Sequence record: MW373745.1
DNA: 64,000 nt
Reading direction: 5' to 3' (one strand)
Positions 54,071-60,879 of this stretch are shown here, one piece after another. How positions within the stretch are numbered: the stretch's first letter is position 1; every line of letters starts with the position of its first letter. The position numbers were made by a program, and so were the translations under genes. Under the pieces are notes generated by a model. The model was not told where the DNA came from and ran no database searches. It saw only the letters and a program-made list of their open reading frames with translations.

Positions 54071-54256
54071 TTTTAATACATAAACTGAAAAAACTCTTAA
54101 AATTCAATTTTTAAATCCTTAAATAAATAATAAGATTCCAATATACTTTAGTCGTTTTAGCCTAAAGGCATCGAAATTGGTTTAAGAGCTCAACAACGAA
54201 GCTTGATGCAGTTCGAGAGACTTTTTGTAATATCAAATCATATTAAAAGGATTAAA

Positions 54257-55639
54257 ATGGCAAATTTACTTAGCCCTGGTATCCAGGTTTCTGAAGTAGA
54301 TCAATCTCAAATTACGCCTGTTGAAGGTGACTCTGCTGCCGTTTTTGGTGGTGATTTTGAGAAAGGACCAGTTGGTGTACATACTTTAATCTCAAGTGTT
54401 CAAGAACTCAGAGATAATTACGGTATGCCTAATACAAAGAATTATAATGATTATTATCAAGTTCAAAATTTCTTAGCTTACAGTGGTGCAATTTATGTTT
54501 CTCGTGCAGCAGACATCAATGGTACACCCACACAATTAGATGGCTTACAATTTGAAGAAAATGCATATAAAACAAATGTTAACGCTAGTAAAATCGAAGG
54601 TGTTAAAGTTATCGAAGCTGACTCTGTAGACGTTAAATTCGAAAAAACTGATAAATTCGAAGTTGGACAAGTTCTTAAATTCAACGATTCTAATAAAGAA
54701 TATAAAATTAAATATGTTAGAAATGAAGTTAAGCAAATACCAAATCCAGATTATCAACCATTAACTCAATTAGTAGTGGACCCAAGTCAAGTAAGTGCTT
54801 ATGTTGATGAAGTTGTTAGCTACGTAATAACAACCGATGCAGAATCTTATACTGTAGAAACAGATAGACCTGATGTGGTTCTTGTTAACAAATCTAATAA
54901 ATCTTTGACTGCATTAAAAGTAGGGACTGCTATTGTAACTTTTAAAGCTACCAAAGAAGGTTCGAGAACTAATTCATTTGAATTAAAATTCGACGTTCAA
55001 GAAAAAGAACAAACAAAATTGATTGTTTCTCCAGAACAATTAAATATAATTCAAGGCGAGCAAGGTGTGTTAAATATCGACACTGATGCTAGTGATTATA
55101 CAATTGTTTCTAAAAACTTAGGTATTGCAAGTATTGAAAGTGATAAGAAAACTGTAAATGGTGTAAGAGTGGGTTCCACTACAATTGAAATCACAGCTCA
55201 AGCTCAAGGAAAAACTGAAGTTACTAAAACTATAACCGTAACCGTTACTGAAGCAGTTGACTTACCAGAAATTACTGGAGTATCTTTTAGCCCAGAATCA
55301 GTTACAGCTAAAATTAATCAAGGTGTTCAAACAGTAACTGCTACATTACCAGAATCTGCTACACTTAAAGCTACTATACAAGATAGTGAAGTTGCAACTT
55401 TGGAAGTTAGTGACAATATTTTAAAAATTACTCCAGTAGCTGCGGGAAACACTACAGTTAATGTAACAGTTTCAAAAGAAGGTCATAAAGATTTTTCAAG
55501 TCAAATATCAGTAACAATTGAAGATTTGCCTGAAATTTCCGACATAATTATCAACAAAGAATCTCTCAGTTTTGATAAAGCCGAAGATGCAGATCCAAGT
55601 GGTAGAGCTAACCAAAAATCTAAAGCTAAGAAAGGATAA
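54257..55639 (+). CDS. Tail sheath N-terminal part fused to three Ig-like domains
   Basis: MANLLSPGIQVSEVD, FEKGPV and FLAYSG.IYVSRA, then three Big_2-like repeats; stops at TAA TAA. Confidence 0.85.
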   Translation: MANLLSPGIQVSEVDQSQITPVEGDSAAVFGGDFEKGPVGVHTLISSVQELRDNYGMPNTKNYNDYYQVQNFLAYSGAIYVSRAADINGTPTQLDGLQFEENAYKTNVNASKIEGVKVIEADSVDVKFEKTDKFEVGQVLKFNDSNKEYKIKYVRNEVKQIPNPDYQPLTQLVVDPSQVSAYVDEVVSYVITTDAESYTVETDRPDVVLVNKSNKSLTALKVGTAIVTFKATKEGSRTNSFELKFDVQEKEQTKLIVSPEQLNIIQGEQGVLNIDTDASDYTIVSKNLGIASIESDKKTVNGVRVGSTTIEITAQAQGKTEVTKTITVTVTEAVDLPEITGVSFSPESVTAKINQGVQTVTATLPESATLKATIQDSEVATLEVSDNILKITPVAAGNTTVNVTVSKEGHKDFSSQISVTIEDLPEISDIIINKESLSFDKAEDADPSGRANQKSKAKKG

Positions 55640-55642
55640 TAA

Positions 55643-56956
55643 ATGGCAGATATCTACGATATACCAGAGTTTATAACTCAAGAAGTAACTATTGTTACTT
55701 TAGACAAAGAACCAGGTGAACTAAATGCAGACACTTCAGTATACTTAATGGAAGGTGAATCTCAACCAGATTCTAATTATATTTTAAGTCTTAGAGGTGC
55801 TAACACTGAATTAAAACGCGGAGATATTATAGCATTTTCTGATGTTTTAACTGATCCAAGATTCAGAATCTTAGCAATCTCTGACAGTATAGTCAATGGT
55901 GAAGCTTTCACAAATATTACTTATGAAGGAACTGAGGATTCTGAAGCTATTGTTGAAGCAACTAAAGGTTTTCCAGTTTATTTAGTTAAGGCTACTAAAT
56001 CGTCTTGTGTTGAAGTTCCTGTAGAAGGTTCTGAAACCAAATACGATGCGTCAGAATATGAACTTTATGATCATACCATTAGTAACTTCAATACATTTGA
56101 TGAAGATAAATTATCTAAACCATTTGTTTATAAAGATGCAAAATTAAAAATATTTGCTAAAACACCGGGAGAGTGGGGCAATAAAATTGATGTCGCAATC
56201 GCACACCCTGATGATTTCAACAAAGGAAAATATATCACTGATGGTATACCATTAGATTCTCAATTTGATTATATTCCTTATGGTGATCAATTTGCTGTTA
56301 TTGTTATCTACGCAAACGAAATTCAAGAATCATTTATTGTAAGCTTAGGCTTAACTGATAAAAATGAGAAAAATGAATTTACTTATATAGAAACAATGAT
56401 TAATGGCAAGTCAAGCTATATCTTAGTTTCTGTAAATGAAGCAGTTCAAGGTAAACCAAAAACTTGTTTAGGTGAAGATTTACTTAAACTTGAAAATGGT
56501 ATGGATTCAGCTCCAGGTATTGGCGATATTATAGACGCTTATACAATTTTTGACAACAAAGAAGAAATCGATGTTGATATCTTAATTTGTAACGAAACTT
56601 ATCCAAAAGCAGCTACTGATATTGCGATTACTCGTGGTGACTGTATAGCATTTATGGGTGCACCAAAAAGTTGTTCAGTGGGTTATAAATCTACAATTGC
56701 TAATCAAAAAACACTTGATTTTAGAAAATCTTTAAATATAGATTCTAAATATGTAACTTTGTGTAGCAATTACAAATATCAATACTGTGCTGAGCTTGGT
56801 GGTTACAGATGGCTGAACTTAGCTGCAGATATTGCAGGTCTTAAAGCTCAAACAAATTATAATCAAGCTAACTGGTATGCAGCTGCTGGTCTTAACAGAG
56901 GTCTCATTAAAAACTGCGAGGCGTTGGCATATAGCCCAACTGGTGCGATGCGTGAT
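55643..56956 (+). CDS. Tail sheath second part, exon 1
   Basis: TPGEWGN, RGDCIAF and WYAAAGLNRG motifs; ends ...AMRD at the 5' splice site. Confidence 0.88.
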
Positions 56957-57073
56957 AGCAACAAAATGCTTTTAATATAATAAAAGTATGTATGTCACCG
57001 GTTACGGAAACGTAACTTGAAAAAAGCCTTTAATTGCTGGAAGGCTAAGTTGTAATATTTCCAAAGGAATAAA

Positions 57074-57946
57074 ATGCAAAAATTAACTTTAAATGAGGAA
57101 AGGTCGGAGCTTCCTCATTTGATCATATTTGTAGAAACACCTAAATTAAAATGTTCTACTAAATTAAATTTAAATTATTCTTATGATATATCTATTAGAT
57201 ATAAATTATTAAAAGAAATTAAAAAATTTAAAGAAAAATATCCAAACTGTGAAAATTTTACTCGTAATAGTAAATTTATCAAAGAATTAAAAGAAGAAAT
57301 ATATAAAAATACTGAATTCTTAGACGATTATAACGCTTGCATATTAGAACGAGTTTATTATATAATAGAAGATTTAAAGCCTATTGATTTAGTTTGTCCT
57401 ACTTGCGGAAATAAGAAAAGATTTAGAAATCTCAGAGAAGGGTTTTCTAATGGATGTTCAAGCAGACACGCGAACTCAACGATGTCCAATGTATTAGCAA
57501 AATCACAGAGTGAAAAAGTTAAAGAAACTTTTAAAAATAAATCACCAGAAGAAAAACAGCAAGCTATAAACAAAGCCAAAGAAACCAAGCGTAAAAAATA
57601 TACACACGAAGATCTAAGCAATATAGCTAAGAAAGCATATCAGGAACATAAAGAAGTCTTTAAATTAGCTATTATTAAAAGAAATGAAACTTATAAGAAT
57701 AATCCAGAAATTATTAAAAATGCCGCTATCAAAGCTGCAAAAACTATGAAAAATAAAAAGATTGAATATAACGGTGAAATTATAGATCATTATCAATTTG
57801 TACATTTAAAAAAATTAGAAAAAGATGAAAATGGTTTAAATTTCTATGATAGGATGCAAATACAAAATCTCGAAAAAGATGAAAATGGTTTAAATTTCTA
57901 TGATAGACACAGAATTAAAAATGCAAGAAAGTGGTGTTTGGCCTAA
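57074..57946 (+). CDS. Intron-encoded homing endonuclease, N-terminal (zinc finger plus repeat) part
   Basis: CPTCG...GCS; basic repeats; 35-bp direct repeat at 57818 and 57872. Confidence 0.65.
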   Translation: MQKLTLNEERSELPHLIIFVETPKLKCSTKLNLNYSYDISIRYKLLKEIKKFKEKYPNCENFTRNSKFIKELKEEIYKNTEFLDDYNACILERVYYIIEDLKPIDLVCPTCGNKKRFRNLREGFSNGCSSRHANSTMSNVLAKSQSEKVKETFKNKSPEEKQQAINKAKETKRKKYTHEDLSNIAKKAYQEHKEVFKLAIIKRNETYKNNPEIIKNAAIKAAKTMKNKKIEYNGEIIDHYQFVHLKKLEKDENGLNFYDRMQIQNLEKDENGLNFYDRHRIKNARKWCLA

Positions 57947-58241
57947 ACCCGAAGATTTACCTGATTTCGAGTACTATAGACGCGTTGTTTGGCGATATAC
58001 TAATAAAAACGATTTAAAAACTTTAGAAAATTATGATAAAAGAGGAACTCTGAAAAACAATGGGTATCATTTAGATCATATATACTCTATAAAAATGGGA
58101 TTTATCAATAATATACCCGCTTATTTAATAGGTAACATATCAAATTTAAGATTTATACCAGCAGTTGAAAATATAAGTAAAAATAGAAGGTGCGATATCG
58201 AAATAGATGATATCTATAATTATATAATACAAAATAAATAA
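57900..58241 (+). CDS. Intron-encoded HNH nuclease domain in the +1 frame
   Basis: YHLDHIYS...NLRFI...ENISK. Confidence 0.75.
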   Translation: MIDTELKMQESGVWPKPEDLPDFEYYRRVVWRYTNKNDLKTLENYDKRGTLKNNGYHLDHIYSIKMGFINNIPAYLIGNISNLRFIPAVENISKNRRCDIEIDDIYNYIIQNK

Positions 58242-58589
58242 ATTGAATTTGTTTAAAAGATTCAATTTTATGTAGAACAAATAAATAAATTGAATCTATT
58301 TAAAAAAGATTCTACTTTGCATTTTGTGATTAAAACTCCGAAACTTTTAATCACTTTACAATATGCTAATCAGCAGCGAAGCTCTTTTTTAAAAGAGAAC
58401 GTTCAACGACTATCGAAAGGGTCTTATAGACACCAAGTAGAGTAGAATTCAAGCGAATTCGAAATGGGGCGCTCTAAGTCATTATGATATGAGCAAGATA
58501 TAGTCTGATCTTTAACGAAAGTTAAAGCAGTTCGTTGTTTACCATTACTTCGAACGGACATCGCGTAGCGAACGATGTTGAACACAATG

Positions 58590-59012
58590 ATACTTTACAA
58601 GAATGGTATAAATCCAGTAGTTATGTTTCCAAACACTGGTGCAGTTCTTTGGGGTCAAAAAACATTACAAACTAAAGCTTCAAGCTTCGATCGTGTAAAC
58701 GTTGTTAGCTTGTTTAACCATTTGGAAAGATCTTTAGGGCGTATGTCGAAGTATAGTCTATTTGAGTTCAATGATAGTTTTACAAGAAATTACCTTGTAA
58801 GTATTATCAAACCTTTCTTGGCGCAAGTAAAAGCTGGCCGCGGGATCCAAGACTACCTTGTGATATGTGACGCATCAAACAATCCAGCAAGTGTAGTTGC
58901 AGCGAACCAACTCGTCATAGACGTATATATTAAGCCGACTTATGTTGCAGAGTTCATTCATCTCAGATTCACGAATGTCGGTTCAAACGACTTCAGCATT
59001 GTTGTAAGCTAA
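58590..59012 (+). CDS. Tail sheath, exon 2 (C-terminal domain)
   Basis: LYKNGINPV, LWGQKT, RVNV..LF and IKPTYVAEFI motifs. Confidence 0.92.
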   Translation: MLYKNGINPVVMFPNTGAVLWGQKTLQTKASSFDRVNVVSLFNHLERSLGRMSKYSLFEFNDSFTRNYLVSIIKPFLAQVKAGRGIQDYLVICDASNNPASVVAANQLVIDVYIKPTYVAEFIHLRFTNVGSNDFSIVVS

Positions 59013-59038: not shown

Positions 59039-59058
59039 CAAGGATTTTACGATCCTTG
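59039..59058. terminator. Hairpin between convergent genes
   Basis: CAAGGAT-N6-ATCCTTG. Confidence 0.45.
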
Positions 59059-60879
59059 GATCCACTGAAACTTCATATTTCCACAATCGTATATTATTCT
59101 ATAACCATTTAGCATCATATTAGCACTTTCTGAAAGACTAGGATCGAAAATCTCTAACTTTTCTTTTAGCTTATGTTTTTGAAATTGATGTCTAGCCAGC
59201 AATTTTAAATCTTTGAAATAAAAATAATTAGGCTCAGTATTCTCTACGAACTTAAAACCTAAGGTTTTATATATTGACCCTTTACTAAATCTTCTATTAG
59301 CATAACTTACTATACTTTTTGGTTTATAATTGTCTAAGAAATACTTAAATAATTTAGAAGCTCCTCCTATAACCGAACAATATTTTAAAGTGCATAATCT
59401 TATTAATTCATATTCATAGTTTTTATTAAATCTAGGCTTACCAAATGTCATAACTTCTACTAATTCGTTATTATAAAATAAACCTAAATTAATTTTTGAA
59501 ACTGTCGATTTCTGTAAATGATTCTCATTTAAAAAGTCAACTACTTCATTATAACTTAATTCTTTTATAATACATTTTCTAGCATAAATTTTTTTATTTA
59601 AACCTAGTTTGTTATTAATCATAGAAAACCATATATCTAAATCATCAGATTCAAAAATATGAAATAATTGTATCTCCAAAGCTTCACACATTTCTGTCTT
59701 TTTTAAATGATATTTTTTATCATAATCAGGTGTATTAAACATTCTATGTTTATGTAAACCTCTACTGTGAAAAAATAAACCATCGTATTCAATTGCTAAG
59801 TTATAATCAGGCAAAAATATATCTAATTCACCCTTTATAATATTTTTAACATTGTATTTTTTTATATCAGTTTTAATAAAATCAAATATTTTTTGTTGTG
59901 TTTTAGCTATACTAGTAACATTAGGTTCTTCTACGTTAAATTTTTTCTTATATTTTAGAACACCTGTCGGGCTTAAGTTATAAAAATTTGAACAGGCGTC
60001 TGCATCAAATCTTTCATTTTTTATGAAAGTCTTAAAATAATCCTCGTGCAGTAAATCATTATTTTTTAAATGTCTTTGAGTTGGGCTAGCGACTCCATAA
60101 AGTTCCAAATTTGTTTGTTTTCGCTTTTCGTTTATTTCTATGATTTCTTCCTCAGATTTTGAATTCCAAGATTCTATAATTAAATCTTTATTACCACACT
60201 CATAACCATAACGTTCCAAATTAGTTTGTTTTCTTTGATCAGCGATTCTTTGTATTTCTTCATCGGATTTAGAATCCCAGGTTTTACGAACGGATTCTTT
60301 AAATTCCTTTGTTTGAGAATTACAGATAACTCCAAACTTTTTTAGATTTGTTTCAATTGTTTTATTTTTAACAACTTCACTTTGTGTCGCATATTCAGTA
60401 TTATATTTACTTAAATTGGTTTCTTTTCTTTTATTGTTTATTTCGGTATAATCTGTATTGGCTTTGGTGTTTCTAATTTTATCATTTACTTCTGGTATCT
60501 GTGATACGTTTTCTACATTGTATTTTTCTTTTATTGTTTCTTTATGTTTATCTATATTATTGTAGTTAGCATCACCATATCTTTCTAATTTTGTAGATTT
60601 GATTTTAGCTATGCGTATTTTGTTAAAATCTGGTGATTTTAGACATTCTTTACAATATTGTGTCCTTGTCTTAGTTCCACAAATTACACAAAAATTAGGA
60701 TTGTTTTGTAAATCCTTGTAGTCTTTGTATATTGAATGAAATTCCCCATTATATTTAGGGTCTTTTAATAGAATATCAATAATTTGTTTTCTATAAAGTG
60801 GATACTGTTTTAATTCAATGAGTATTTCTTTGAAAGTTTTGTTTAGATCTATCGTTATATTTTTATAAGTTACTTTCAT
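59047..60879 (-). CDS. Free-standing Hef-like homing endonuclease (Vsr/PD-(D/E)xK type)
   Basis: KxTNLxxYG repeats; ELDIFLPDYNLAIEYDGLFFH; GGASKLFKYF...SYANRR...YDCG. Confidence 0.8.
   Translation of the reverse strand: MKVTYKNITIDLNKTFKEILIELKQYPLYRKQIIDILLKDPKYNGEFHSIYKDYKDLQNNPNFCVICGTKTRTQYCKECLKSPDFNKIRIAKIKSTKLERYGDANYNNIDKHKETIKEKYNVENVSQIPEVNDKIRNTKANTDYTEINNKRKETNLSKYNTEYATQSEVVKNKTIETNLKKFGVICNSQTKEFKESVRKTWDSKSDEEIQRIADQRKQTNLERYGYECGNKDLIIESWNSKSEEEIIEINEKRKQTNLELYGVASPTQRHLKNNDLLHEDYFKTFIKNERFDADACSNFYNLSPTGVLKYKKKFNVEEPNVTSIAKTQQKIFDFIKTDIKKYNVKNIIKGELDIFLPDYNLAIEYDGLFFHSRGLHKHRMFNTPDYDKKYHLKKTEMCEALEIQLFHIFESDDLDIWFSMINNKLGLNKKIYARKCIIKELSYNEVVDFLNENHLQKSTVSKINLGLFYNNELVEVMTFGKPRFNKNYEYELIRLCTLKYCSVIGGASKLFKYFLDNYKPKSIVSYANRRFSKGSIYKTLGFKFVENTEPNYFYFKDLKLLARHQFQKHKLKEKLEIFDPSLSESANMMLNGYRIIYDCGNMKFQWIQGS

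What the first reader, a model, noticed from the sequence alone, without database searches (positions are those of the whole stretch)
56957..58589. Group I intron in a structural gene, with the endonuclease ORF in the P5 extension
Seen: P, Q, R and S elements; P1 (exon GUGAU with GUCAC at 56994-56998, U-G at the splice site); P10 (AAAGUAU at 56983-56989 with exon 2 AUACUUU); GAAA-capped P2 (57001-57016) and P9 hairpins; terminal G at 58589. Splicing restores RD-ILYKNGINPV. The ORFs lie between P and Q, closed by UUGUAA/UUACAA. Established: phage group I introns mostly occupy DNA-metabolism genes, with ORFs in L6, L8 or L9; a sheath host gene and a P5 ORF are less usual. The ORF track misses this, so the gene appears broken.
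Basis: partly seen in the sequence, partly recalled or inferred. Interest (0 to 1): 0.68.

Follow-up and report, generated by a model that had tools for sequence, protein, structure and literature searches.

The report
Self-splicing intron in phage tail-sheath gene
The tail-sheath gene of this Campylobacter phage is interrupted by a genuine but unannotated group I intron; its homing-endonuclease gene sits in an unusual loop (P5a), whereas relatives carry the same endonuclease in other loops of the same intron.

Summary
Window 56957-58589 (1633 nt) is a T4-td/Twort-like (IA2-like) group I intron in the gp18-like tail sheath gene of Campylobacter phage CJLB-13 (also F379 and CP21).

- **Boundaries.** Seven related phages lack exactly these 1633 nt. 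CJLB-14 reads CGTGAT|ATACTT uninterrupted.
- **Ribozyme.** The core matches Rfam RF00028 at 47 bits (E 2.5e-10, cut-off 50). All helices P1-P9.2 pair, and relatives support them by compensatory changes, including P1 (GUGAU/GUCAC here, GAGAU/GUCUC in relatives).
- **ORF position.** The ORF lies in the terminal loop of P5a (UUGUAA/UUACAA). That hairpin is 8-30 nt long in 75 metagenomic relatives.
- **Endonuclease.** It belongs to an unnamed family with an HNH-like D-H...N...N motif. It is intact in CP21, frameshifted here by one extra A (57917-57921), and largely deleted in CC_R7.

New here: the same endonuclease family interrupts sheath genes at the same codon in metagenomic phages, but lies in P6 (five contigs) or in the P1 loop (three contigs). 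P5a is therefore a derived position.

Splicing was not shown: no RNA run carried a spliced junction. No paper I could search describes this intron, and database records list the sheath pieces as separate genes. It is an ordinary kind of element in an unusual host gene and loop.

The parts
55643..56956 (+). Exon 1 of the gp18-like tail sheath gene (438 codons, ends ...AMRD)
   Evidence: phrog_23 tail sheath, E 1.9e-29, profile 132-334 ends at residue 438. Pfam Phage_sheath_1 match is weak. Contiguous with exon 2 in CP220 and CJLB-14.
56957..58589 (+). Group I intron, 1633 nt
   Evidence: Absent precisely from 7 related phages. RF00028 47 bits, E 2.5e-10. Exon 1 ends in U and the intron ends in G.
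56994..56998 (+). Internal guide sequence GUCAC, which forms P1 with exon GUGAU 56952-56956 (U.G at the splice site)
   Evidence: 5/5 pairs. Compensatory change in relatives: exon GAGAU with guide GUCUC in L010, L011, L012, L014, L091, L093.
56983..56993 (+). P10 strand, either AAAGUAU (56983-89, 7 bp with exon 2 AUACUUU) or GUAU (56990-93, 4 bp, adjacent to the guide)
   Evidence: Both pairings are complete. In relatives the P10 strand abuts the guide: L012 AAAAG/CUUUU, L010 UAAAC/GUUUA. The register is therefore undecided.
57000..57017 (+). P2 hairpin with GAAA loop
   Evidence: 7/7 pairs. Relatives have different stems with a GAAA or GUGA loop.
57026..57040 (+). P3 5' strand GCCUU (57026-30), J3/4 AAU, P4 5' strand UGCUGG (57035-40)
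   Evidence: CCUUUAAUUGCUGGAA is identical to the phiKZ-like intron L005, which scores 95 bits. P3 pairs with GGGGC 58466-70 and P4 with UCAGCA 58370-75. P3 covaries: CUCCUU/GGGGAG in L010, UCUAUC/GGUAGA in L012.
57043..57055 (+). P5 5' strand GGC, CUAAG half of a receptor-like motif, and P5a 5' strand UUGUAA (57050-55)
   Evidence: 75 metagenome contigs have GGCUAAG + hairpin + UAU + GCUAA. The hairpin's closing pair is canonical in 44 of 44 distinct versions, of three pair types. The minimum-energy fold of the natural deletion variant closes P5 and P5a, z -5.8.
57056..57073 (+). Small hairpin that holds the Shine-Dalgarno sequence AAGGA of the endonuclease gene
   Evidence: Fold. An equivalent but stronger hairpin, with a different stem, stands before the ORF in L010, L011 and L012.
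57074..57946 (+). Endonuclease ORF, N-terminal part (290 aa): Cys cluster and repeated helical / IDENGLNFYDR modules
   Evidence: ORF list. 96-97% identical to the intact 388-aa ORFs CP21_075 and P0001. The first two Cys of the cluster and a later Cys are invariant.
57917..57921 (+). A5 run. CP21 and a pig-gut relative have A4, so this is a +1 frameshift splitting the endonuclease gene
   Evidence: Alignment. Read laying reports '57917 left out 1' in X1. F379 is identical to the window.
57900..58241 (+). Endonuclease ORF, C-terminal part (113 aa): HNH-like nuclease domain, YHLDH...NL...N..K
   Evidence: Invariant D59, H60, N82, L83, N91 in 33 homologues. AlphaFold2 model pLDDT 86 with strand-strand-helix around these residues. 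phrog_5104, E 5e-16. Atlas lead to PF01844 at 0.90. No Pfam or PDB sequence hit.
57809..57922 (+). 54-nt tandem repeat, 2.1 copies, encoding the LEKDENGLNFYDR module
   Evidence: Copy number of this module varies among homologues.
58242..58355 (+). 3' untranslated part of the P5a insert: two copies of the ORF end plus hairpin, and a 10-bp hairpin at 58326-58354
   Evidence: Sequence. 10/10 pairs. CC_R7 has an A-to-G change that keeps a G.U pair. Fold.
58356..58375 (+). P5a 3' strand UUACAA (58356-61), UAUG half of the receptor-like motif, P5 3' strand GCU (58365-67), P4 3' strand UCAGCA (58370-75; Q element)
   Evidence: Q is found only downstream of the ORF.
58376..58402 (+). P6/P6a, a short hairpin with no ORF
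   Evidence: In L010, L011, L014, L091 and L092 the ORF sits here instead.
58401..58413 (+). R element GUUCAACGACUA with the P7 5' strand GACUAU (58408-13)
   Evidence: Rfam alignment. Pairs with AUAGUC 58500-05.
58419..58460 (+). P7.1 (58419-34) and P7.2 (58445-60) hairpins between P7 and the P3 3' strand
   Evidence: Pairing. Covariation with phiKZ-like, cr118_1, Vibrio, L010 and L011 introns.
58466..58494 (+). P3 3' strand GGGGC (58466-70) and P8 (58471-94)
58495..58527 (+). S element AAGAUAUAGUCU with the P7 3' strand, and P9 with a GAAA loop (58510-27)
   Evidence: P9 is a 7-bp covarying stem with a GAAA loop in 34 of 40 distinct relatives.
58530..58589 (+). P9.1 (58530-55), P9.2 (58558-78), conserved tail UGAACACAAUG and terminal G 58589
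   Evidence: Pairing. CC_R7 has a compensatory U-A to C-G change in P9.2. The tail UGAACACAA(C/U)G is shared with the phiKZ-like, L010 and L011 introns.
58590..59012 (+). Exon 2 of the sheath gene (ILYKNGINPV..., 140 codons plus stop)
   Evidence: phrog_23, E 8.4e-45, profile 336-461. Pfam Phage_sheath_1C, E 2.3e-11. tblastn hits more than 2600 phage sheath genes.

Best explanation
Window 56957-58589 is a mobile group I intron of the phage IA2 type, like the T4 td, Twort and phiKZ RNA-polymerase introns. It interrupts the gp18-like tail sheath gene between codons D438 and I439.

Proposed mechanism:
1. On the late sheath transcript, the guide GUCAC pairs with the exon end GUGAU (P1, U.G at the splice site).
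2. The core P3-P9 folds across the 1.3-kb insert, because P4, P5 and P5a close it off.
3. A GAAA loop on P9 probably docks on the CUAAG/UAUG motif in P5.
4. Guanosine attacks after U56956, and the freed exon then attacks after G58589. The exons join to give ...AMRD-ILYKNGINPV..., a 578-aa sheath protein like that of the intron-less phages.

The insert in the P5a terminal loop is a homing-endonuclease gene: an N-terminal Cys cluster, helical and IDENG repeats, and a C-terminal HNH-like nuclease. In its intact form (CP21) it presumably cuts intron-less sheath alleles during mixed infection, and the intron is copied in by repair. In this genome the gene is broken by one extra A, so the element here is a spliceable but probably immobile copy.

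Shown: boundaries, ribozyme anatomy, covariation, ORF position, ORF decay series. Inferred: splicing activity, the L9-P5 docking, endonuclease activity and target.
For: - **Exact absence in relatives.** Seven related phages lack the 1633 nt. CJLB-14 shows CGTGAT|ATACTT as one open 578-codon gene.
- **Profile continuity.** The sheath profile runs continuously across the junction.
- **Rfam.** RF00028 at 47 bits, E 2.5e-10, with perfect R and S elements. Sequence relatives score 78-97 bits.
- **Pairing and covariation.** All 18 helices pair fully. Covariation is seen in P1, P2, P3, P7.1, P7.2, P8, P9 and P9.2.
- **P5a.** The frame is supported by 44 distinct natural hairpins and by the fold of the CC_R7 variant.
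- **Selection on the ribozyme.** CC_R7 lost about 1 kb of the ORF but kept the whole ribozyme.
- **No independent start for exon 2.** In relatives, exon 2 has no conserved start codon.
- **Viability.** Four plaque-forming isolates carry the intron in a sheath gene.
- **Endonuclease family.** 32 homologues. All eight closest whose context I read lie in introns at this sheath site.
Against: - There is no RNA evidence. The public runs gave only unspliced or relative contigs.
- The Rfam score is 3 bits under the curated cut-off. Whole-window and whole-genome scans miss the element.
- P1 has only 5 exon pairs and P3 only 5 pairs, two of them G.U.
- The nuclease domain matches no Pfam, NCBIfam or PDB sequence, and a fold search could not be run.
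- The endonuclease is frameshifted here.
- Firehammervirus phages have three sheath-like genes, so it is not proven that this copy is essential.
Confidence: 0.88

Rival explanations
1. Gene in pieces. The insert is a homing-endonuclease cassette with a dead ribozyme remnant. The sheath protein is made as two polypeptides (445 aa and 145 aa) that assemble without RNA splicing, as happens for some split phage ribonucleotide reductase genes.
For: Exon 1 reads on to a stop 8 codons into the intron, and exon 2 has in-frame ATGs at 58575 and 58587. Database records annotate the pieces as separate genes. No spliced RNA was seen.
Against: Every catalytic element and helix is intact and kept by compensatory changes. 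CC_R7 deleted the ORF but not the ribozyme. No Shine-Dalgarno sequence precedes 58575 or 58587. Relatives L010, L011 and L012 have no start codon at the exon 2 boundary.
Confidence: 0.06
2. The ribozyme lies wholly downstream of the ORF, as in the local Rfam alignment: P3 = CUUUAC/GUAGAG, P4 = UGCU/AGCA, no P5. The ORF would then sit between P2 and P3, not in P5.
For: The Rfam alignment places model positions 1-253 on 58309-58527. A 6-bp CUUUAC/GUAGAG pairing exists.
Against: - That alignment has many non-canonical pairs in P1-P3.
- All relatives have P3-5' + AAUUGCUGG directly 5' of P5, and the window has this sequence at 57026-57040.
- GUAGAG is the conserved spacer between P7.1 and P7.2 in relatives.
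- The CC_R7 change U58364C would break that P4.
- The P5a frame is shared with 75 compact relatives.
Confidence: 0.03
3. The intron splices, but the split endonuclease is still active, either through ribosomal frameshifting in the A-run or as a two-piece enzyme. The element would then be fully mobile here.
For: The frameshift lies in a slippery A5 run. The second ORF overlaps the first by 47 nt and has its own ATG at 57900. Two records, F379 and CJLB-13, carry the same state.
Against: CP21 and a pig-gut relative have a plain intact ORF. CC_R7 shows that the gene decays in this lineage. No shift signal was identified. F379 and CJLB-13 are 100% identical across the sheath-gene region compared and may not be independent.
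Confidence: 0.1

Closest known systems
T4 td intron with I-TevI, and the Twort orf142 introns (phage subgroup IA2; from my own knowledge)
   Same: R element GUUCA.CGACUA and S element AAGAUAUAGUCU, P7.1/P7.2 hairpins, GNRA-capped P2 and P9, U.G in P1, terminal G. The endonuclease gene sits in a peripheral loop, and its ribosome-binding site lies in a hairpin.
   Different: The host gene is a tail sheath gene, not a nucleotide-metabolism gene. The ORF is in P5a rather than P6a (td, nrdB) or P9.1 (sunY). The endonuclease is HNH-like, not GIY-YIG.
Group I introns in the RNA polymerase genes of phiKZ-like Pseudomonas phages (L005:1418-1663, Rfam 95 bits)
   Same: Closest sequence relative among cultured phages. 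CCUUUAAUUGCUGGAA, AAUCAGCAGCGAAGC and GUUCAACGACUAUCGAAAGG are identical, as are the P7.1-P7.2 spacer GUAGAGUAG and the 3' tail UGAACACAA.G.
   Different: P5 there is a plain 5-bp hairpin without the CUAAG/UAUG motif, L9 is GUGA, and the host gene and endonuclease differ.
Metagenomic sheath-gene introns carrying the same endonuclease family (L010, L011, L014, L091, L092 in P6; L012, L013, L093 in P1)
   Same: Where both exon ends are on the contig (L010, L011, L012, L091), the insertion codon is the same..RD|xLYK (L014 shows the 5' side only). The sheath protein is 54% identical in L010. The endonuclease is homologous at 33-50% identity. A hairpin precedes the ORF, checked in L010, L011 and L012. 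The intron type is the same.
   Different: The ORF sits in a different loop. The Campylobacter-phage endonuclease is sister to the P6-borne ones of L010 and L011 (support 100/99).
Intron plus intein in the terminase gene of Campylobacter phage IBB_35 (PMC3322345)
   Same: Same phage genus, also a late or structural-function gene, also carrying an HNH-type endonuclease.
   Different: Different gene. IBB_35 lacks the sheath intron. That paper gives no RNA structure.
Intron in the major capsid gene of crAss-like phage cr118_1 (L004:1354-1651, Rfam 94.7 bits)
   Same: A structural host gene, the same intron subfamily, and an enlarged P5 of about 85 nt.
   Different: No ORF.

Membership tests
Group I intron (Rfam RF00028) | Conserved catalytic core P3-P9 with the R and S elements and the P7 guanosine site | tested here: met
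   Rfam alignment with GUUCAACGACUA and AAGAUAUAGUCU, E 2.5e-10. P3, P4, P6, P7, P8 and P9 all pair fully.
Group I intron (Rfam RF00028) | Score at or above Rfam's curated gathering cut-off (50 bits) | tested here: not met
   47 bits. The 1.3-kb ORF separates the P1-P4 5' strands from the rest, so the model cannot align them. Relatives without that insert score 78-97 bits. Whole-window scans find nothing.
Group I intron (Rfam RF00028) | P1 formed by the exon end and an internal guide, with U.G at the 5' splice site | tested here: met
   GUGAU/GUCAC, 5/5 pairs. Compensatory GAGAU/GUCUC in six relatives.
Group I intron (Rfam RF00028) | Terminal G, and P10 with the start of exon 2 | tested here: met
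   G58589. A 7-bp or a 4-bp P10 is possible. The 3' tail is conserved with relatives.
Group I intron (Rfam RF00028) | Precise removal restores the host reading frame | tested here: met
   Intron-less alleles and profile continuity.
Group I intron (Rfam RF00028) | Guanosine-dependent self-splicing | not testable with these tools
   RNA runs held only contigs, none spliced.
Subgroup IA2 (phage type) | P7.1 and P7.2 between P7 and the P3 3' strand, plus td/Twort-like R and S sequences | tested here: met
   Hairpins 58419-34 and 58445-60 with covariation. The definition of the subgroup is recalled from memory. No subgroup-specific model was run.
HNH (beta-beta-alpha-metal) homing endonuclease | Catalytic D/H-H ... 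N ... N/H motif on a strand-strand-helix fold | tested here: inconclusive
   Invariant D59, H60, N82, N91. The model has strands 56-60 and 83-87 followed by helix 88-94. hhalign pairs NLRFIPAVEN with NLEWISSKDN of an annotated HNH enzyme at low probability. Atlas gives a lead only. No Pfam or PDB sequence hit.
HNH (beta-beta-alpha-metal) homing endonuclease | Intact reading frame | tested here: not met
   Split into 290 aa and 113 aa by an extra A at 57917-57921. Intact in CP21 and in P0001.
HNH (beta-beta-alpha-metal) homing endonuclease | Cleaves the intron-less allele near the insertion site | not testable with these tools
   Indirect only. The family is tied to this sheath site in nine independent contexts.

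The most novel reading that the evidence does not exclude
One endonuclease lineage has changed loops while staying with one intron lineage at one homing site. It lies in P6 in most sheath introns, in P5a in the Campylobacter phages (sister to P6-borne copies), and in the P1 loop in another clade. The endonuclease cassette, together with its small upstream hairpin, would therefore be mobile within or between introns, independently of the ribozyme. This makes a natural series for asking how endonuclease genes invade introns and which loops tolerate them.
Probability: 0.55. Interest if true: 0.6.

Novelty: new member of a known kind. Interest (0 to 1): 0.45.

Why it matters
- **Annotation.** The sheath gene of CP21, F379, CJLB-13 and CC_R7 is listed as two to four separate genes plus hypothetical proteins. 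The CC_R7 paper counts five sheath genes. Default Rfam scans miss the intron because the ORF splits the core.
- **Biology.** The Firehammervirus genus shows the full life cycle of a homing element: empty site, intact endonuclease, frameshifted, deleted. This is relevant to the genetic stability of phages proposed for Campylobacter biocontrol.
- **Intron evolution.** The same endonuclease family in three different loops of homologous introns at one site is a compact natural data set on how endonuclease genes and ribozymes associate.

None of this changes what group I introns are known to do.

Tried and rejected
- **Rfam scans.** Whole-window Rfam at the gathering cut-off and at E 0.01 found nothing. 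RF00028 over the CP21 record also found nothing. This is a sensitivity limit, not evidence against the intron.
- **RNA runs.** Six runs were listed. All were contigs, with no exon-exon joint. The only joints came from other introns with a short P5a.
- **Endonuclease naming.** Pfam, NCBIfam, PDB by sequence and by profile, and hhalign against one HNH enzyme gave no usable match.
- **Short-P5a relative.** An exact-pattern search in viral contigs found none.
- **First P3 guess.** My first guess for the P3 3' strand (AAAGG..CUU at 58416-26) was dropped in favour of GGGGC 58466-70, by homology with relatives.
- **Rfam's local P3/P4.** Rejected; see the rival explanations.
- **Promoters.** The promoter scan is not above chance, so no promoter is claimed.
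- **Papers.** The 2012 CP21 genome announcement and the 2014 classification paper could not be read.
- **Exons.** They were searched one at a time by reference.
- **Not used.** Complex prediction and the large representative protein search.
Full report
**Identity of the window.** The region is 100% identical to Campylobacter phage CJLB-13 (MW373745.1, same coordinates) and to F379, and 98.8% identical to CP21. All are Firehammervirus (group II) T4-like myoviruses of C. jejuni and C. coli.

**Observation.**
- ORF 55643-56980 and ORF 58575-59012 are the two halves of a gp18-like tail sheath protein. The PHROG profile phrog_23 covers positions 132-334 in the first ORF, ending at residue 438 (D, codon 56954-56956). 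It resumes at position 336 at residue 7 of the second ORF. Pfam gives Phage_sheath_1C for the second ORF.
- I searched the exons one at a time by reference.
- In six related phages (CP220, CPt10, IBB_35, CP20, WX1, CJLB-14) the two flanks lie side by side. The match spans 1737 nt, which equals 1314 + 423. CJLB-12 also lacks the intron but spans 1736 nt.
- CJLB-14 reads ...GCGTGAT|ATACTTTAC... as one 578-codon gene.
- The only ambiguity from a shared A at both ends is settled by the group I rule. Exon 1 ends in U56956 and the intron ends in G58589.

**The ribozyme.**
- A 2-kb Rfam scan gives RF00028 at 58309-58527, 47 bits (cut-off 50), E 2.5e-10, with textbook R (GUUCAACGACUA) and S (AAGAUAUAGUCU) elements and a GAAA-capped P9.
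- Scans of the whole window, and of the CP21 record, miss it.
- blastn of the 3' part finds about 200 phage records with related introns. Several of these score 78-97 bits.
- These relatives show the layout: P3-5' strand, AAUUGCUGG, P5, AAUCAGCAGC, P6, R, P7.1, P7.2, P3-3' strand, P8, S, P9.
- In the window the first block (GCCUU-U-AAUUGCUGG, 57026-57040) is upstream of the ORF. AAUCAGCAGC (58368-77) is downstream.
- I checked by script that all helices pair fully: P1, P2, P3, P4, P5, P5a, P6/6a, P7, P7.1, P7.2, P8, P9, P9.1 and P9.2.
- Rfam's own local placement of P1-P4 downstream of the ORF is an artefact of forcing the whole model onto one piece. It has many non-canonical pairs, uses the conserved P7.1-P7.2 spacer GUAGAG as P3, and is broken by the CC_R7 change U58364C.

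**Covariation.**
- P1 is GUGAU/GUCAC here and GAGAU/GUCUC in six metagenomic sheath introns.
- P2, P3, P7.1, P7.2, P8 and P9 keep pairing with different sequences.
- Within the genus, CC_R7 has a U-A to C-G double change in P9.2.

**Where the ORF sits.**
- A pattern scan found 75 metagenome contigs with AAUUGCUGGAAGGCUAAG-N(8-30)-GCUAAUCAGCAGC.
- Their 44 distinct inserts are a variable hairpin followed by UAU (39 of 44).
- The closing pair is canonical in 44 of 44 (U-A 24, G-C 18, A-U 2) and the second pair in 43 of 44. At least 3 bp form in 73%, against 5.6% of shuffles.
- The window has the same frame: GGCUAAG | UUGUAA (57050-55) ... 1300 nt ... UUACAA (58356-61) | UAU GCUAA.
- The natural deletion variant of CC_R7 folds with P5, P5a and the 10-bp hairpin 58326-54 closed (z -5.8).
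- CUAAG/UAUG resembles the 11-nt GAAA-tetraloop receptor. That resemblance is from memory and was not tested. L9 is GAAA here and in 34 of 40 distinct relatives that have the motif. An L9-P5 docking contact proximal to the insert is therefore likely.

**The endonuclease.**
- CP21 has one intact 388-aa ORF. The window has an extra A in the run 57917-57921, which gives 290-aa and 113-aa ORFs. A pig-gut relative lacks the extra A. CC_R7 has lost about 1007 nt of the ORF but none of the ribozyme.
- The protein has only 32 detectable homologues, none of them named.
- Conserved features are an N-terminal Cys cluster, helical repeats, IDENGLNFYDR repeats (the 54-nt tandem repeat) and a C-terminal YHLDH...NL...N..K domain.
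- The C-terminal domain's model (pLDDT 86) has a strand-strand-helix arrangement around the invariant D, H, N and N. In other proteins this domain is fused to various DNA-binding modules such as DUF7487, HTH and zinc fingers.
- I call it HNH-like.

**Relatives of the whole element.** The eight closest endonuclease homologues whose context I read all lie in introns of sheath genes. Where both exon ends are on the contig, the insertion is at the same codon (..RD|xLYK). The ORF position differs:

| ORF position | Contigs |
|---|---|
| P6 | L010, L011, L014, L091, L092 |
| P1 loop | L012, L013, L093 |
| P5a | Campylobacter phages only |

- A bovine-gut contig has the window's P5/P5a sequence closed by a 6-nt loop, with a roughly 620-nt insert in P6.
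- In a protein tree the Campylobacter endonuclease is sister to the P6-borne L010 and L011 copies (support 100/99). The P1-borne copies form their own clade, and the other P6 copies are unresolved at the base. The tree is unrooted and has long outgroup branches.
- P5a is therefore a derived position.
- A small hairpin holding the Shine-Dalgarno sequence precedes the ORF in all four contexts folded. It is weak in the window.

**What is not shown.** Splicing itself is not shown. Public runs gave contigs only, either unspliced or from relatives. The case rests on:
- the intact, selected ribozyme;
- the lack of an independent start for exon 2 in relatives;
- the viability of four isolates that carry the intron.

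**Literature.**
- The IBB_35 paper reports an intron and an intein in the terminase gene, not in the sheath gene (PMC3322345).
- The CP21 genome paper mentions neither introns nor the sheath gene (PMC4546147).
- The CC_R7 paper counts five sheath genes (PMC12398825).
- The F379 paper does not mention introns.
- Searches for group I introns in tail sheath genes, or for ORFs in P5, returned nothing specific.
- Two older Campylobacter-phage papers could not be read.

**Verdict.** This is a new, unannotated member of a known kind. Its host gene and ORF loop are unusual, and the same endonuclease family occupies three different loops in related introns.

Noticed in passing
L008:1605-1625 (Campylobacter phage CJLB-12, MW074125.1): This intron-less sheath allele has a scrambled junction exactly at the intron insertion site. 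GAT|ATACTTT is replaced by GAT-TTCTAT, one base shorter, so the gene is frameshifted and annotated as two CDS. It could be a repair scar after endonuclease cutting, a resistant site, or an assembly error.
   Followed up: partly
window 54203-55639 and 55643-56956: An N-terminal sheath-like protein with Ig-like (Big_2) domains (phrog_20545) is followed, in the same frame, by the intron-bearing sheath gene after one stop codon and one further codon. The arrangement is conserved in CP220. Another first-stage note covers it.
   Followed up: no
window 59047-60879 (-): A free-standing 610-aa homing endonuclease of the Hef type lies just downstream of the sheath gene (phrog_3339, E 7e-149; DUF7487; a C-terminal match to the Mom family). 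It shares only the N-terminal Cys-plus-repeat module with the intron endonuclease (E 0.004). Metagenomic relatives L010 and L011 also have a DUF7487-type gene downstream of the sheath gene.
   Followed up: partly
L094:1501-1608 (CP220, NC_027997.1 155913-156020); also CJLB-12, CJLB-14, IBB_35: A 36-42 codon fragment, 78-89% identical to the N-terminus of the intron endonuclease, lies beside the third sheath paralogue in phages that lack the sheath intron. It is probably a remnant of another copy.
   Followed up: partly
L014 (ERZ1742225 contig) and L053:8312-13232: These metagenomic sheath genes carry two group I introns each. In L053 the endonuclease homologue at the first site is on the opposite strand, and a second intron with a 1.7-kb P6 insert splits exon 2.
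   Followed up: partly
L091:3001-4047: This endonuclease homologue, in a sheath intron, translates to the database protein only with TAG read as Q. The contig is therefore probably from a stop-codon-recoded phage.
   Followed up: no
window 58232-58316: The last codons of the endonuclease ORF, together with the following AUUGAAU...AUUCAAU hairpin, occur twice in tandem (about 58232-58270 and 58280-58316). This may be a footprint of how the cassette was inserted.
   Followed up: no
window 57026-57031 with 58416-58420: The P3 5' strand CCUUU is also complementary to AAAGG directly after P7. This second complementarity is kept in the phiKZ-like, L010 and L011 introns. It may be an alternative pairing during folding.
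   Followed up: no
L003:2501-3839 (CP21): In the CP21 record, sheath exon 1 is itself annotated as two overlapping CDS (CP21_077 and CP21_076). This points to a further frameshift or sequencing error there.
   Followed up: no
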